DNA of 64,000 nt from Ylistrum balloti (lineage: Eukaryota): NCBI RefSeq assembly GCF_031769215.1, contig NW_026782207.1:620001-684000 (forward strand), read 5' to 3'. Position 1 is the stretch's first letter. Each line of letters opens with the position of its first letter. The notes below the pieces were generated by a model that did no database searches, was not told where the DNA came from, and saw only the letters and a program-made list of their open reading frames with translations. The position numbers and the translations under genes are program-made. Shown here piece after piece: positions 1-9,268 of this stretch.

Positions 1-931
1 TGTGTACTAACAAGTATTCCTGTATTGACAACGTGCATTGCAATTTTCAACAAATTGATTTTTCTGAAATTTTCTTCAAACATATTAATAATAAGATTAT
101 ATGTATTATGGAGATGAATGAAAATTAGTTTTGAGTGAAAGTTCGATAGTATTCCTTGTTAAATATATGTATGAATTCGTATTAAGCTGGTAAGACTAGG
201 TATACTTTCAGCTCGACCATCAGTGGCGTTCATACATGTCGAATTACTGTGTGTTAACTGGAATCAATAATTCACTAGTATATACATACGGCCTTTCATG
301 CCTCTCTAATGATACGTGCTACAATCATCACTACCCCTACAATAGATGTGAACTATTCGCCTATGAATAAGTAATTCTATGAAGTATAAATGTTCACGCA
401 ACATTCATAAAGGTGTGAACACCATATCATAAAAGCAGAAAGCAATTTCAATATCAGTTGTAAAAACGGTACACAGTTTGACTATGGCCTTATGTAAATA
501 TAGCGGTAGCAATTTGTCATCTATCATTTCGTGTTATTTAACTTCCAATTTTTTTAACAACATGATTTTTTTTTTAAATTCGAGTACCCTAGAACAATTT
601 TAACTCCATGCATGTGTTCATGAACAAATATTGTATAGTATTGTCTAAATAAATGTATAACCAGCAAAATAAATTATTCCAGATTTAATTGTTATATATT
701 AACTGTCAGATATTTTTATTTGTACTTTATGTAATCAATGTCTTATTCCGATTTTATATCAAATTATAACATAAGTATGTACAAAAACATTTCAAAAAGA
801 GGAAAGAAAAGTGTAAAAAAGAATATTCATTGGTTAAGGTAAGCAAATTGTACAAAAAACACACAAGTGAATAGCACATCTTACTACAATTTCATAGTTA
901 GATACAGTAGAGCTAAACAACGACTGAAACT

Positions 932-975
932 GCACCATACAGCTGTTTCGTCCTTATAGAACTCGTCAGTGATAC
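932..975 (-). ncRNA. Minimal type I hammerhead ribozyme (Penelope/retrozyme type)
   Basis: Minus strand reads GTATCA-CTGACGA-GTTCT(ATA)AGGAC-GAAA-CAGCTG-TA-TGGTGC. It has an intact CUGANGA and GAAA core, a 5-bp stem II, a palindromic stem III (ACAGCUGU), a GUA cleavage triplet and a 6-bp stem I (2 wobbles). Confidence 0.8.
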
Positions 976-1570
976 TACGGGCCTTAATTTTGAAGTACAT
1001 CTATAGTAGGCACCCAAAGTAATCACAAGGAAAGTCAAACCCTAGATTTGGAGGTGCACTAGACTTTCTGATACTACATGTGTTGTTATAGTACAAATAT
1101 ATACTATACCCTATCTCTTTTCTCGTCTGCAAGCCTTTGTTTTTCTTTGAGAAGCTCCGGAGTCAGTATAGGCATATTCAGGGGTTCTAATCGCTGAAAC
1201 AGATGTCGACAGAAACATCAAAAGCAAATAAAAACATAAACGGGAAAAGGGAAAAAAAGACAGCATTAATAAATTCATATTTTCTATTAATTATAAAAAT
1301 AAAATTCATATGAGGAAACATATGCTAATGCATTGCCAGGCACGTTGTAAGGCAGCATCTGTGAACTCATATTTGAAGACAATAAAAAACAATGGTGAAC
1401 ATTAAATGCATTAAATGGAATGCCCTTACTATCACCAAGTAATCGGAGTGTACGTCATGATTAGATTTAATGCAATTTTATTGTGGGAAAATAAAAGATT
1501 TTTACTCAAAGCTACCAATTCAATAAAACCAGGGTAAATGTGATCAAAAGAAAGACGGAGACACCTGGAA

Positions 1571-1657: not shown

Positions 1658-1926
1658 TTCACGTAATAAAGTCACGTTCTCAAGCGCGAACATGGTTTAT
1701 AAAAATGGGACCAAGTGGCAAAATATGGAGCACCATATATCTTAAGCTTCATATCGCACAAAAACAAATTCTCAATGAGATCACTATGACGACGGTAAAA
1801 CCTCCCGATAATTTTCATCAACATGCATCTTTTGAAACTCTGTGTTATGAGTTTGCCTGTCAATTGACGACACCTTGTATATAAAATTAGAGTAAGATGG
1901 AGCAGAGCCTAAACCTGAGTTAAACT

Positions 1927-1970
1927 TAATCATACAGCTGTTTTGTCCTTCTAGGACTCATTAGTGATGT
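1927..1970 (-). ncRNA. Degenerate (probably inactive) hammerhead paralogue
   Basis: ACATCA-CTAATGA-GTCCT(AGA)AGGAC-AAAA-CAGCTG-TA-TGATTA. Same architecture as 932-975, plus ~45 bp of shared flank, but core G5 and G12 are mutated to A. Confidence 0.65.
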
Positions 1971-3642
1971 AAAGGTGAAAAATAGGACTCGACAGAGAGC
2001 GAACCAAAATGGTCGAAATGATATTCTATTCTGTTACCTTTAGCTTCATAGGAGGGTGCTTGGCGATGAGGCTCGGTTTCTCCTCCCCGTCCATTCCCAC
2101 AGAAAAACTGATAGACTTGGGAAGAGCTGAAAATATATCAAAACCCGATTTTTACTTAATCATCGTCATGAAAATGCACATATTGAGTGACGTGAACAAT
2201 GAATACATATTTATTGTATCTTCAAATATCAAAAGAGATATGATATCGAGGAATAAATGTTTGTGATTTATTTAACGCTACGATGGACTATATAAACGTA
2301 ATCATTGTACACACGAACATATGTCTAATGTTCAATTTTCTTAACAGAAAAGAGAACTTCAGCCCTTTCTATGTCATGTAAGTAGCTACGAGTCAAATTT
2401 GGAACCGTTATCCTAAGAATAAATAAACTTGTATCGGCAAGGTGAAAGACCGAAAAGTCAAAATTGAAAAATATACCACCTCACTAATGCACATGGGTTT
2501 ATCTGAACTCCAACGATTAAAACGGAAACTAAGGAACCGATAAAATAAATTACTCACTCCTAATATTACAATCAGAGGTGAAACCAGAAATCAGGTTTGG
2601 TCTGAGAACAAGATTCCCGATTTGACACAAATATCGCTTGTTAACTAAGTATATAATTAGATAAGCACCTGTTCATCTTTTCTGCATCCAAAAAGTAGCA
2701 ACCCTATTGGTATATGTCAGACGATGGTGGTAAATTATATTTAATGTAATGAAGTATCACCTGTTGTTTTTGATTGATTTTTCTTTTTTAATTATTCATT
2801 TATTCTTCGTTAATGTGAGCCTTCTCTGATATTGCGTTACCTCACACCAGCGTATAATCAAAATTAACTGTGAGAAAAGGTGTTATGGAAACTAACAAAA
2901 GATGATAAAGTTAGGTCTAGTAACTTCAATTTATATATAACCCTAAGACAAATTAGAAATTATCAATAAGTTTCACACACCGTACCAGTAATCATCTGTT
3001 TAGATTTGAAATTTGGCGTTGAATTCACAGTAATTTGGTTTTATCAGAGCATCTAGGATAGTGTTGAATAAGTCTGAACATAGGTTGATATTGCACTTAA
3101 TTTGGCTGTGCGTTTTACTACAGTGCTTAAGAGCATTATATGCCGATAATATCAAATGCCACGTGGTGAACCAAAACCCTGGCACAGGATCGTTGTCGTG
3201 TTACAAACGATTTAAAGAGTAATGTATGCAGATTTTATTGGGCTACTGCCACACACATGTCAAACTTTCACTGTGCTGTTGATTATTGAGAGTTGTGTGA
3301 AACACATGCTGTAGTATTGGCATGTGTCCTTTCTTCCCCATACCGAGTTTGTCGACCGAATTATCTAAAATATCCCCAAGCAAAATGATTCACTTGTTGT
3401 GCAAGGTGTAAGGTTTGACCATAAGTGATAGAGGTTAGGTTTCACAAGCATTTTGTTTTTTAATTTCTACAATAGACTAGTAAAAAACTATATGAGTAAT
3501 AAAATGCAAATGAATCAACTCTGGAACTTTGAATTATTTTCATAAAGAGAATTAATGTCATTGAGTCTAAGTTTAAGATCTGTGAAGAATGGTGAGAACA
3601 AACCTATGCATGCGGTTAATTGAGTTCGTTATTAATTCAACA

Positions 3643-3875
3643 NNNNNNNNNNNNNNNNNNNNNNNNNNNNNNNNNNNNNNNNNNNNNNNNNNNNNNNNNN
3701 NNNNNNNNNNNNNNNNNNNNNNNNNNNNNNNNNNNNNNNNNNNNNNNNNNNNNNNNNNNNNNNNNNNNNNNNNNNNNNNNNNNNNNNNNNNNNNNNNNNN
3801 NNNNNNNNNNNNNNNNNNNNNNNNNNNNNNNNNNNNNNNNNNNNNNNNNNNNNNNNNNNNNNNNNNNNNNNNNNN
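3643..3875. other. Assembly gap
   Basis: Run of 233 N. Confidence 1.
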
Positions 3876-5107
3876 TTACGACTAGTTTTTGCACGTGTAA
3901 ATGCGTACCTGGAATCTTACTCTAGTTTCTCTTTGCCTTGTATCTGCGTTGTCCAAATTTCTTGAAAACTTTACCAAACTTGGTGTTGCTTTGATATACA
4001 TTACTTCGTATTTTTATATATCTTTTTATTTTTCTAATTTTCATGATTTTTGAAAGTAGCCAAAAACATCTTTGACTTCTCTGTCATTGCTTTCAACACA
4101 GTTACATTTTTAAATGGTTGTTCTTCATCGATATTTTTATGGAATCTGAGTTGATATTGGGTTAAGTTGCCATGTTGGTATTTTCTTGACGTTTCTTGAA
4201 TACTTCAGAATATTTTATAATCGCTTTTGGTCCTCTGAATAAATAATGACAAAATTTTCAATAAACAAATGGTGGGTCTCAGGAACACATTATTCCTCAT
4301 CCCCAGACCGACCTTAACTGTTGTCAGTGATGTAGATTACTACAAGGTGTTATATAGAGCAGTTGCACGTGATAATCGTCTCCAATTACATGTTTTAATA
4401 ACACCCATCAGGCTATACATGTCTGCCAATCTCTTACTTTTTTGAGTAGTTATTCATGTATGTCAAATAGTGTCATTAATTTGACACATGCCTTAAAATA
4501 TGTGACGGCAATATGGAATCAATACACACAGATGCATTTGTGGTGCTAGAAAACTAACACAATGTGTCACATTGTCTCTATGGCATCAAAAATTGAGGAA
4601 AAATCTATATCTTTATTGACATCTATTCATTTAGTGTCTGCATTGTCATCTAAGACAGAGCAATTACAATGACTGTTCCAGATAAACAGCAATAAATATC
4701 TATATGTACATAAAATTGCAATCCTTACTCCAAATCGATAACACTACTGATGCGTCATACAAACAAATGAAATATTTACATTAAATCATATGGAAAATTT
4801 ACAATGCGAATTAGAAATGTAACAGAAAATTAGCATACCGTGATACAATGCGTAAAAGCTAAGCGTCAATATTAGCATAGAACGGTAACATTGATTTGTC
4901 AATATCAACATAAAGTTTCGTTAACACATAACGGCTACAACGATTGGTCAATATTAACATTTAAGTTTCTTCGGCACGTAACGACAACAACGATTGGTTA
5001 ATATTAGCTTTAAATGCTGTTTAATACACATGTACATCATTACAATGATTGGTTGAGATTAACCAATGGTAGGGGAGGACAGTGATTTGAATGATATCAT
5101 TACTTAC

Positions 5108-5312
5108 CAGGAGCATTGTTTGTGATAACATCGTCTCGGTTGGCGTTTGTGTCTGTGGTTTTTCGTATTTCTTTATTCTTTGCGTTGTTTTCCTTCACTG
5201 CTACTGGGTGGCCATTGGACACGATTTTGGTCTCTTGAGGTTTGGGCTTATCACGTGGTGTATTAGCGGCTCCTCCCTCTTCGTGAACAAGGTGGGACGG
5301 TCCACACCCCAT
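5108..5312 (-). CDS. First coding exon of an unidentified protein with N-terminal myristoylation/palmitoylation motif (MGCGPS)
   Basis: The ORF starts ATG GGG TGT GGA CCG TCC in a locally GC-rich segment, runs 68 hydrophilic codons and ends at a perfect donor CCTG|gtaagta (phase 1, intron starts 5107). Downstream exons are uncertain: one candidate is 3364-3243, and the gap at 3643-3875 may hide others. Confidence 0.65.
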
Positions 5313-6461: not shown

Positions 6462-9268
6462 ACATCTAGTGTTTTGGTACCGTCTAGTGTCTGTAGGACT
6501 ATTCATAGTAACATATAGTGTCTGTAGGACTATTCATAGTAACATCTAGTGTCTGTAGGACAATACATAGTAACATCTAGTGTTTGTAGGACTATTCATA
6601 GTAACATCTAGTGTCTGTAGGACTATTCATAGTAACATCTAGTGTCTATAGGACTGTACACAGTAACAACTGAGGTCTGTAGGACTGTACACAGTAACAT
6701 CTAGTGTCTATAGGACTGTACACAGTAACATCTATTATCTGTAGGACTGTATACAGTATCATCTAGTGTCTGTATGACTGTACACAGTAACATATAGTGT
6801 CTGTAGAACTGTACACAGTATCATCTAGTGTCTGTAGGACTGTACACAGTTATATGCAGTGTCTGTAGGACTGTACACATAGTAACATATAATGTCTATA
6901 GAACTGTACACAGTATCATCTAGTGTCTGTAGGACTGTACACAGTAACATATAGTGTCTGTAGAACTGTACACAGTAACATCTAGTGTCTGTAGGAATAT
7001 ACACAGTAGCATGCAGTGTCTGTAGGACTGTACACAGTAACATATAGTGTCTGTAGAACTGTACACAGTAACATCTTATGTCTTTAGGAATATACACAGT
7101 AGCATGCAGTGTCTGTAGGACTGTACACAGAAACTGTGTTATATAGTGTAGGACTGTACACATAGTAACATATAATGTCTATAGAACTGTACACAGTATA
7201 CACAGTAACATAACATATTGTCTGTAGAACTGTACACAGTAACATCTTATGTCTTTAGGAATATACACAGTAGCACATCGTGTAGTGTCTGCAGGACTAT
7301 ACACAGTAACATCTATTGTCTGTATGACTGAACACAGTAACATCTAGTGTCTGTAGGACTGTACACTGTAACATCTAAGGTCTGTAAGACTGTACACAGT
7401 AACATCTAGTGTCTATAGGAATGTACATAGTAACATCTAGTGTCTGTAGGACTGTACACAGTAACATATAGTGTCTGTAGGACTGTACACAGTAACATCT
7501 ATTATCTGTAGGACTGTATACAGTATCATCTAGTGTCTGTAGGACTGTATACTGTAACATCTAAGGTCTGTAAGACTGTACACAGTAACATCTAGTGTCT
7601 ATAGGAATGTACATAGTAACATCTAGTGTCTGTAGGACTGTACACAGTAACATATAGTGTCTGTAGGACTGTACACAGTAACATCTATTATCTGTAGGAC
7701 TGTATACAGTAACATATAGTGTCTGTAGAACTGTACACAGTATCATCTAGTGTCTGTAGGACTGTACACAGTTATATGCAGTGTCTGTAGGACTGTACAC
7801 ATAGTAACATATAATGTCTATAGAACTGTACACAGTATCATCTAGTGTCTGTAGGACTGTACACATTAACATATAGTGTCTGTAGAACTGTACACAGTAA
7901 CATCTAGTGTCTGTAGGAATATACACAGTAGCATGCAGTGTCTGTAGGACTGTACACAGTAACATATAGTGTCTGTAGAACTGTACACAGTAACATCTTA
8001 TGTCTTTAGGAATATACACAGTAGCATGCAGTGTCTGTAGGACTGTACACAGAAACGTGTAGTGTCTGCAGGACTATACACAGTAACATCTATTGTCTGT
8101 ATGACTGAACACAGTAACATCTAGTGTCTGTAGGACTGTACACTGTAACATCTAAGGTCTGTAAGACTGTACACAGTAACATCTAGTGTCTATAGGAATG
8201 TACATAGTAACATCTAGTGTCTGTAGGACTGTACACAGTAACATATAGTGTCTGTAGGACTGTACACAGTAACATCTATTATCTGTAGGACTGTATACAG
8301 TATCATCTAGTGTCTGTAGGACTGTACACTGTAACATCTAAGGTCTGTAAGACTGTACACAGTAACATCTAGTGTCTATAGGAATGTACATAGTAACATC
8401 TAGTGTCTGTAGGACTGTACACAGTAACATATAGTGTCTGTAGGACTGTACACAGTAACATCTATTATCTGTAGGACTGTATACAGTAACATATAGTGTC
8501 TGTAGAACTGTACACAGTATCATCTAGTGTCTGTAGGACTGTACACAGTTATATGCAGTGTCTGTAGGACTGTACACAGTAACATATAGTGTCTGTAGGA
8601 CTGTACACAGTAACATCTATTATCTGTAGGACTGTACACAGTAACATATAGTGTCTGTAGAACTGTACACAGTATCATCTAGTGTCTGTAGGACTGTACA
8701 CAGTTATATGCAGTGTCTGTAGGACTGTACACATAGTAACATATAATGTCGATAGAACTGTACACAGTATCATCTAGTGTCTGTAGGACTGTACACATTA
8801 ACATATAGTGTCTGTAGAACTGTACACAGTAACATCTAGTGTCTGTAGGAATATACACAGTTGCATGCAGTGTCTGTAGGACTGTACACAGTAACATATA
8901 GTGTCTGTAGAACTGTACACAGTAACATCTTATGTCTTTAGGAATATACACAGTAGCATGCAGTGTCTGTAGGACTGTACACAGAAACGTGTAGTGTCTG
9001 CAGGACTATACACAGTAACATCTATTGTCTGTATGACTGAACACAGTAACATCTAGTGTCTGTAGGACTGTACACTGTAACATCTAAGGTCTGTAAGACT
9101 GTACACAGTAACATCTAGTGTCTATAGGAATGTACATAGTAACATCTAGTGTCTGTAGGACTGTACACAGTAACATATAGTGTCTGTAGGACTGTACACA
9201 GTAACATCTAGTGTCTGTAGGACTGTATACAGTAACAGCTAGTGTCTGTAGGAATATACACCGTAACA
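6462..9268. repeat. 31-bp minisatellite (~90 copies) with higher-order structure
   Basis: Consensus TAGTGTCTGTAGGACTGTACACAGTAACATC. Variant blocks recur at offsets of 186, 777 and ~930 bp. Confidence 0.97.

What the first reader, a model, noticed from the sequence alone, without database searches (positions are those of the whole stretch)
932..975. Apparently intact minimal hammerhead ribozyme on the minus strand
Seen: all conserved core nucleotides (CUGACGA, GAAA, GUA triplet) and stems I-III are present, and stem III is the palindrome ACAGCUGU. Established: such minimal type I hammerheads occur in Penelope-like elements and retrozymes and often cleave as dimers through the palindrome. Inference: it lies on the same strand as, and downstream of, the MGCGPS gene, so it could cut that gene's intron or read-through RNA, acting like a co-transcriptional cleavage element.
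Basis: partly seen in the sequence, partly recalled or inferred. Interest (0 to 1): 0.7.

Follow-up and report, generated by a model that had tools for sequence, protein, structure and literature searches.

The report
Lone hammerhead ribozyme from mobile element
The 44-base hammerhead ribozyme motif is really there and looks intact, but it is one worn, shortened copy of a small mobile element that carries about 20,000 such motifs in this bivalve genome, and nothing indicates that it regulates the neighbouring gene.

Summary
Observation confirmed. Window 975..932 (minus strand) is a full-length type I hammerhead: the CUGACGA, GAAA and GUA core is intact, helix I has 6 bp, helix II 4 bp, and helix III is 2 bp plus an AGCU loop (palindrome ACAGCUGU). 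It matches Rfam Hammerhead_1 end to end at 27.5 bits, below the gathering score of 34.

It is not a free-standing gene element. It lies inside a 216-bp, 5'-truncated copy (window 1062..847) of a dispersed, non-coding repeat with a unit of about 350-400 bp. That repeat has a sharp 3' end, variable 5' ends and occasional tail-to-head junctions. The genome (648 Mb, a scallop according to earlier scan notes) holds 19,716 near-typical hammerhead units of this family.

The family resembles the non-LTR retrozymes described in mussels, which are thought to be mobilised by Penelope-like elements. The window copy differs from the family majority at 19% of positions. About half of the sampled dispersed copies still have an intact core, so intactness here is unremarkable. 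Folding predicts that the lone monomer is disfavoured, and the only nearby partner has a dead core.

The idea that it cleaves the host gene's RNA has no support, but could not be tested with RNA data. The scan has met this family repeatedly elsewhere in this genome. Ordinary; low interest.

The parts
932..975 (-). Type I hammerhead ribozyme motif, 44 nt, core intact. The predicted self-cleavage site is 3' of A938, between 938 and 937.
   Evidence: Sequence read. Rfam RF00163 full-length match at 27.5 bits. Core and stem check.
939..946 (-). Helix III palindrome ACAGCUGU. In a monomer it gives 2 bp plus an AGCU loop. Between two copies it gives an 8-bp intermolecular helix.
   Evidence: The cofold of two copies gives the double hammerhead at -22.3 kcal/mol.
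847..1062 (-). The whole repeat copy that carries the ribozyme. It is a 216-bp, 5'-truncated, solitary copy of a non-coding element with a unit of about 350-400 bp. GC is 38%. No target-site duplication was detected.
   Evidence: Genome matches. Alignments. BLAST extents 1058..847. Boundaries, GC and duplication check.
1871..1975 (-). A second, older fragment of the same family on the same strand. Its hammerhead remnant at 1970..1927 has CUAAUGA and AAAA (G5->A, G12->A), so the core is dead, but the helix III palindrome is kept.
5100..5312 (-). The 70-aa ORF beginning MGCGPS. It runs into a consensus 5' splice site G|GTAAGT (exon end 5108, GT at 5107-5106), so it may be a first coding exon whose intron contains both repeat copies.
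   Evidence: No Pfam family and only weak Atlas leads. Gene status and intron extent are inferred, not shown.

Best explanation
The motif is the ribozyme of a small non-coding mobile element. It is not a device of the host gene.

The family has a unit of about 350-400 bp and about 38% GC. It carries one canonical type I hammerhead, which in many copies is expanded into arrays of 45-bp units. The hammerhead lies roughly 90 nt upstream of a sharply defined 3' end.

Copies have variable 5' ends. A few extend beyond one unit length, so that a tail is followed directly by a head. This is the pattern expected if a reverse transcriptase starts at a fixed internal site on a multimeric or circular RNA and stops at variable distances. 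That is how non-LTR retrozymes and Penelope-like elements are thought to spread (inference from the literature).

In the family's life cycle, paired hammerheads of neighbouring units would cut the multimeric transcript into unit-length RNAs (inferred, not shown here).

The window copy is a dead-end product. It is truncated to 216 bp, solitary, and differs from the family majority at about 19% of positions. It lies in sense orientation about 4.1 kb downstream of a possible first exon. Its ribozyme sequence has survived, as it has in about half of the sampled copies. As a lone monomer with a 2-bp helix III it should cleave poorly or not at all.
For: - Full-length Hammerhead_1 match. Family-typical copies score from 34.1 bits up to 41.6; 27 matches are over Rfam's cut-off in the genome scan.
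- The flanks are homologous to dozens of loci at 76-86% identity.
- 3,245 and 19,716 family units genome-wide, with 0 in the reversed controls.
- Sharp 3' end: homology runs only a few bases past it in nearly all comparisons. 5' ends are variable, with up to about 285 bp of extra upstream homology.
- Tail-to-tail spacing of 398, about 400 and 349 bp, and tail-to-head junctions.
- A tail-only 86-bp copy exists.
- No tRNA-like head and no other Rfam family in the element.
- RT plus GIY-YIG ORFs are present in the genome.
- The window copy differs from the majority at 40 of 213 positions.
- Conservation is 0.93 in the ribozyme against 0.90 in the flanks.
- 16 of 30 sampled copies have an intact core, and 7 of 30 also have all stems paired.
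- The monomer fold is disfavoured and the dimer fold is favoured.
- Published description of 350-390 bp hammerhead repeats expressed as circular RNAs in the mussel (PMC7229834).
- Published accounts of retrozyme 'monomer derivatives' spread evenly along chromosomes, 44% of them intronic in Xenopus (bioRxiv 10.64898/2026.07.22.740005).
- Published account of internal initiation giving Penelope-like elements a fixed 3' end (PMC11167929).
Against: - No RNA data could be obtained, so neither family expression, circular RNAs nor cleavage is shown.
- No sequence link to a Penelope-like element was found. None of 30 GIY-YIG loci shares the family's tail, and the family fragments near three of them look like separate insertions. 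Rfam finds no hammerhead within 1.5 kb in the 20 of those loci that were scanned.
- No target-site duplication flanks the window copy.
- Within-family covariation is nearly absent, with only the terminal helix I pair alternating G-C, G.U and A-U. The ribozyme assignment therefore rests on the match to the known consensus, not on covariation found here.
- Secondary-structure energies ignore tertiary contacts and protein help.
Confidence: 0.85

Rival explanations
1. Exapted intronic ribozyme. The sense-oriented hammerhead cuts the MGCGPS gene's pre-mRNA or read-through transcript co-transcriptionally and so tunes expression or termination. This is the first reader's idea, and it is analogous to the intronic HH9/HH10 hammerheads of amniotes.
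For: - Core and all stems are intact.
- The motif is on the same strand as the ORF and 4.1 kb downstream of it, and the ORF ends in a consensus splice donor.
- All three stem differences from the family-typical unit keep pairing through G.U.
Against: - The motif is embedded in an ordinary decaying repeat copy.
- The ribozyme differs from the majority at 4 of 44 positions and the tail at 11 of 82, so it is not clearly better preserved.
- Half of the sampled copies keep the core by chance.
- Three wobble-preserving changes out of three has about a 1 in 8 chance if they are random transitions (my arithmetic).
- The monomer fold is disfavoured, and in native context it has about zero probability.
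- The in-cis partner has a dead core, and in the predicted heterodimer it is this dead core that faces the window's cleavage strand.
- In Xenopus such elements are depleted from introns rather than recruited.
Confidence: 0.05
2. Occasional, functionless cleavage in trans. The lone copy pairs through its helix III palindrome and helix I with abundant RNAs of the same family made elsewhere. It is then sometimes cut, as a neutral side effect.
For: - Two units are predicted to form the double hammerhead with intermolecular helices I and III at -22.3 kcal/mol.
- About 20,000 units exist in the genome.
- In the mussel, related RNAs are reported to reach very high levels.
Against: - Expression of the family in this species is not shown.
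- Helix I of the window copy differs from the typical unit at two positions, which weakens trans pairing.
- Nuclear concentration and timing are unknown.
Confidence: 0.08
3. Chance resemblance. The 44 bases match the hammerhead consensus by accident and have no ribozyme ancestry.
For: The Rfam score is below the gathering threshold. At 27.5 bits, on the order of a hundred chance hits would be expected in 648 Mb (my scaling of the E-value).
Against: - Homology of the motif plus its flanks to dozens of copies at E down to 1e-39.
- Family counts of 3,245 and 19,716 against 0 in the controls.
- Family-typical copies pass Rfam's threshold.
Confidence: 0.01

Closest known systems
Non-LTR retrozymes of metazoans, especially the 350-390 bp hammerhead repeats of the mussel Mytilus galloprovincialis (Cervera & de la Pena 2020, PMC7229834)
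   Same: - Canonical type I hammerhead with a short helix III and a palindromic loop.
- Non-coding unit of about 350-400 bp with low GC (38%).
- Bivalve host.
- Thousands of copies.
- Tail-to-head (tandem) junctions.
- Coexistence with Penelope-like elements in the genome.
   Different: - The window copy is a solitary, 5'-truncated fragment, not a tandem repeat.
- Most sampled copies of the family are dispersed and truncated with a fixed 3' end.
- The ribozyme itself is often expanded into 45-bp arrays inside the element.
- Circular RNAs are not shown.
- Sequence similarity to the mussel repeats could not be tested, because no mollusc sequences are on hand.
Minimal hammerheads in the terminal repeats (pLTRs) of Penelope-like elements (Cervera & De la Pena 2014, PMC4209133; Frangieh et al. 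2024, PMC11167929)
   Same: - The ribozyme is expected to work as a dimer.
- Insertions have a fixed 3' end, variable 5' truncation and partial tandem structure.
   Different: - No RT/GIY-YIG ORF is next to the window copy.
- No shared sequence with 30 GIY-YIG loci.
- The architecture is the 'canonical' type I (helix I 6 bp, helix II 4 bp), not the min-HHR with long helix II and short helix I.
Intronic hammerheads of amniotes, HH9 and HH10 (Rfam RF02275, RF02277; from my own knowledge of de la Pena & Garcia-Robles 2010)
   Same: A hammerhead in sense orientation inside a probable intron.
   Different: - Those are single-copy and deeply conserved at orthologous sites.
- This one is a member of a 20,000-unit repeat family with neutral-looking decay.
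- Rfam's best match here is Hammerhead_1, not HH9 or HH10.
Schistosoma Sm-alpha repeats and newt satellite 2 (cited in PMC4209133 and PMC7229834)
   Same: Repeats of about 330 bp, each carrying one type I hammerhead that needs a partner copy for efficient cleavage.
   Different: Different phyla and sequences. Sm-alpha is described as SINE-like, whereas no Pol III-type head was found here.

Membership tests
Hammerhead ribozyme, type I (Rfam RF00163) | Conserved core: C3 U4 G5 A6 N7 G8 A9, G12 A13 A14, the A15.1-U16.1 pair, and H17 not G | tested here: met
   CUGACGA, GAAA and U-A at the expected places.
Hammerhead ribozyme, type I (Rfam RF00163) | Three helices around the core, with helix I open (type I topology) | tested here: met
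   Helix I 6/6, helix II 4/4, helix III 2 bp plus a 4-nt loop. The cmscan alignment covers model positions 1-45.
Hammerhead ribozyme, type I (Rfam RF00163) | Score at or above Rfam's gathering threshold (34 bits) | tested here: not met
   The window copy scores 27.5 bits. Family-typical relatives score 34.1 to 41.6 bits. The shortfall comes from three G.U pairs and loop differences.
Hammerhead ribozyme, type I (Rfam RF00163) | Self-cleavage at the predicted site | not testable with these tools
   This needs in vitro transcription or RNA-end mapping.
Hammerhead ribozyme, type I (Rfam RF00163) | Covariation supporting the helices | tested here: inconclusive
   198 distinct units were compared. 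Only the terminal helix I pair alternates G-C, G.U and A-U. Other pairs vary mostly by single disruptive changes, because the family is too young and too uniform.
Non-LTR retrozyme (metazoan) | Canonical type I hammerhead inside a short non-coding unit (about 170-400 bp) of low GC (under 45%) | tested here: met
   Unit of 349-400 bp, GC 0.38, and no long ORF or other RNA family in the element.
Non-LTR retrozyme (metazoan) | Head-to-tail tandem arrangement, so that two ribozymes flank a unit | tested here: not met
   This row applies to the window copy, which is solitary, 216 bp long and has one ribozyme. For the family the result is partial: there are tail-to-head junctions in L032, L034, L051, L054 and L057, and a dimer in L054, but most sampled copies are single and truncated.
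Non-LTR retrozyme (metazoan) | Expression as unit-length circular RNA | not testable with these tools
   No RNA data are available.
Non-LTR retrozyme (metazoan) | Autonomous Penelope-like elements present in the same genome | tested here: met
   51 GIY-YIG matches. The ORF L066:121-1974 carries RVT_1 followed by GIY-YIG.
Penelope-like element terminal repeat (pLTR) | The ribozyme-bearing repeat flanks an RT plus GIY-YIG ORF | tested here: not met
   There is no sizeable ORF near the window copy. No family tail is shared with 30 GIY-YIG loci within 1.5 kb, and Rfam finds no hammerhead in the 20 of them that were scanned.
tRNA-derived SINE | tRNA-like, Pol III-promoter head | tested here: not met
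   ARAGORN and Rfam find nothing tRNA-like in five long copies.

The most novel reading that the evidence does not exclude
The lone, sense-oriented, sequence-intact hammerhead in the probable first intron has been recruited by the host. It would be cut co-transcriptionally, perhaps only after pairing in trans with abundant RNAs of its own repeat family. That would couple the gene's output to the activity of the mobile element. It would be an invertebrate counterpart of the conserved intronic hammerheads of amniotes.
Probability: 0.04. Interest if true: 0.6.

Novelty: new member of a known kind. Interest (0 to 1): 0.13.

Why it matters
In itself it matters little. It is one of about 20,000 hammerhead units of a repeat family in this genome, and the kind is already described: type I hammerheads in small non-autonomous retroelements of bivalves and other animals.

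Its main use is as a caution. An intact-looking ribozyme next to a gene in such a genome is expected by chance. In this sample about half of the decaying copies keep the core.

At family level the anatomy is a tidy genomic signature of internally primed reverse transcription of a multimeric or circular RNA: a fixed 3' end about 90 nt downstream of the cleavage site, variable 5' ends, and some copies longer than one unit. It would be worth testing with RNA data from this species.

Tried and rejected
- Rfam at gathering threshold on the whole window gave nothing. The motif only appears with the E-value threshold.
- Link to Penelope-like elements: I compared long family copies with 30 GIY-YIG loci and scanned 20 of them with Rfam. 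No shared tail and no hammerhead turned up. Family fragments 0.5-1.1 kb downstream of three loci sit at inconsistent positions and look like separate insertions.
- tRNA- or SINE-type head: none found.
- Target-site duplication at the window copy: only 5-mers, which is chance level.
- Identity of the MGCGPS ORF: Pfam gave nothing significant, and the Atlas gave only weak leads of 0.82 and 0.80. I ran no further search on it.
- Subfamily check: the window's exact 44-mer is unique, and there is no copy within one mismatch. Its variant positions recur singly in other copies, so I cannot tell inherited changes from local ones.
- Covariation within the family: too little variation to be informative.
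- Literature search for scallop hammerheads returned only hammerhead sharks.
- The masked N stretch at about 3640-3890 was left alone.

Full report
**What is there**

Read on the minus strand, window 975..932 has these parts:
- helix I 5' strand GUAUCA
- core CUGACGA
- helix II GUUC / GGAC, closed by the loop UAUAA
- GAAA
- the palindrome ACAGCUGU, which in a monomer gives the A15.1-U16.1 pair, a C-G pair and an AGCU loop
- A938 as the cleavage-site nucleotide
- helix I 3' strand UGGUGC

Every invariant core position is present. Helix I is 6/6 paired with two G.U pairs, and helix II is 4/4 paired with one G.U pair.

Rfam's Hammerhead_1 model aligns over all 45 positions at 27.5 bits (E 5e-5 for the 211 bases searched). 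That is under the curated threshold of 34, which is why a gathering-threshold scan of the window reports nothing. By score alone such a hit would be expected on the order of a hundred times in a 648-Mb genome (my scaling). The motif is validated by its relatives, not by its score.

In the vocabulary of Cervera & De la Pena 2014 this is the canonical metazoan type I hammerhead, not the 'min-HHR' of Penelope-like elements.

**It belongs to a repeat family**

- A 601-base query around the motif matches dozens of other loci of the same assembly at 76-86% identity, with E down to 4e-39.
- The matched stretch corresponds to window 1062..847, or 995..847 in shorter copies, so the ribozyme sits in the middle of a repeat.
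- The genome-wide Rfam scan finds 100 Hammerhead_1 matches among only 73 scored candidates, 27 of them over the cut-off. Many lie in arrays with a 45-bp period.
- A core-intact degenerate 32-nt pattern of the family occurs 3,245 times. The typical 32-mer with up to three mismatches occurs 19,716 times. Both give zero hits for the reversed control.
- Earlier notes of this scan describe the same 45-nt hammerhead arrays on other pieces of this genome, which they take for a scallop. The scan has therefore met this family before.

**Anatomy of the family**

- Alignment of 29 dispersed copies with the window copy shows a sharp common 3' end. Homology stops within a few bases in nearly every comparison. 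The 5' ends are variable.
- The longest copies share up to about 285 further bases upstream.
- In several copies the element's tail is followed directly by its head (L051, L054, L057), or the head is preceded by a tail (L032, L034, L051).
- Tail-to-tail spacing is 398, about 400 and 349 bp. This sets the unit at roughly 350-400 bp with 38% GC.
- Between head and tail there may be one hammerhead, as in the window, or many tandem 45-bp units.
- A tail-only copy of 86 bp also exists.
- The element has no tRNA-like head and no other Rfam family.
- The 3' end lies about 90 nt downstream of the cleavage site. The copied RNA was therefore not a ribozyme-cut linear monomer primed at its end. I infer that reverse transcription started at a fixed internal site on a multimeric or circular RNA.
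- This agrees with the internal initiation shown for a Penelope-like element (PMC11167929) and with the retrozyme model (PMC7229834).

**The window copy**

- It is 216 bp long, 5'-truncated and solitary, without a recognisable target-site duplication.
- It differs from the majority of the sampled copies at 40 of 213 positions: 4 of 44 in the ribozyme, 11 of 82 in the tail and 25 of 87 in the poorly aligned 5' part.
- Across copies, the ribozyme columns are hardly more conserved than the rest (0.93 against 0.90).
- 16 of 30 copies retain the whole core, and 7 of 30 also retain all stem pairs. An intact-looking ribozyme is thus what a decaying copy often looks like.
- The exact 44-mer is unique in the genome, and no copy lies within one mismatch.
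- A second, older fragment of the family lies about 1 kb upstream on the same strand (window 1975..1871). Its ribozyme has G5->A and G12->A.
- No other copy is present in the 64-kb window.

**Would it cut?**

- With nearest-neighbour energies, the hammerhead fold of the window unit is -2.3 kcal/mol, against -8.1 for a competing fold.
- The family-typical unit behaves the same way (-7.8 against -13.6).
- In 204 nt of native context the hammerhead helices have essentially zero pairing probability.
- Two units together are predicted to form exactly the double hammerhead, with intermolecular helices I and an 8-bp helix III, at -22.3 kcal/mol.
- This matches the published view that such ribozymes work as dimers of neighbouring copies.
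- Paired with the decayed upstream copy, the predicted complex puts the window's cleavage strand against the dead core. The only partner available in cis would therefore not help.
- These energies ignore tertiary contacts and proteins, so they are indicative only.

**Gene context**

The 70-aa ORF starting MGCGPS (5312..5100, minus strand) runs into G|GTAAGT at 5108|5107. It may be a first coding exon followed by an intron that holds both repeat copies in sense orientation. This is inference:
- Pfam and the Atlas give no reliable family.
- No downstream exon was identified.
- Sequence beyond the window start could not be fetched.
- RNA evidence was unavailable.

In Xenopus, retrozyme-derived monomers are spread evenly along chromosomes. 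44% of them overlap introns, with a modest depletion from introns after normalising for size. An intronic monomer is therefore commonplace.

**Relation to known systems**

- The family works like, and probably is, a bivalve non-LTR retrozyme. It has the canonical type I hammerhead, a non-coding unit of about 350-400 bp with low GC, thousands of copies and tail-to-head junctions.
- Reverse-transcriptase plus GIY-YIG ORFs exist in the same genome.
- Two defining features remain open: circular RNA expression could not be tested, and regular tandem organisation is only partly met.
- A direct sequence link to a Penelope-like element was sought and not found.
- Within-family covariation is too sparse to add independent support for the fold.

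**Verdict**

Placing it among retrozyme/Penelope-type hammerheads is correct. The proposed role in cutting the neighbouring gene's RNA has no support and several indications against it, though it is not formally excluded. It is an ordinary, truncated member of an abundant family of a known kind.

Noticed in passing
L005:1252-2647, L003:856-1864, L001:823-1710 and other loci: Inside many copies of the same element the single hammerhead is expanded into arrays of 45-bp units, with about 28 matches in L005. The arrays lie between the same head and tail sequences. Earlier notes of this scan describe such arrays on other pieces of this genome.
   Followed up: partly
window 1871-1975 (-): A second, older fragment of the family lies about 1 kb upstream of the first on the same strand. 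Its hammerhead core is inactivated (G5->A, G12->A), but the helix III palindrome is intact.
   Followed up: yes
G000:C422:240415-261997 (L072-L075, L089): Five GIY-YIG matches are spaced about 5.36 kb apart on one strand, four of them in 755-aa open frames. This looks like a tandem array of Penelope-like elements. A related ORF (L066:121-1974) has RVT_1 followed by GIY-YIG.
   Followed up: partly
L084 (reverse-complemented) 2392-2475: An 86-bp tail-only copy of the hammerhead family lies about 600 bp downstream of a GIY-YIG ORF on the same strand. The region between them is not shared with other GIY-YIG loci, so it looks like a separate insertion rather than a shared 3' end.
   Followed up: yes
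window 6825-8120 (-): The ORF list shows the same peptide blocks repeated many times (for example ...CYCVQSYRHYMLLCTVLQTL...). This indicates a tandem DNA repeat of roughly 190 bp.
   Followed up: no
window about 3640-3890: A run of N (masked or gap) lies between the ORF and the ribozyme.
   Followed up: no
L064:440-526: A near-perfect long hairpin (inverted repeat) gave weak mir-15-like Rfam hits on both strands (E 0.07 and 0.15). Most likely it is just a palindrome next to a Penelope-like element.
   Followed up: no
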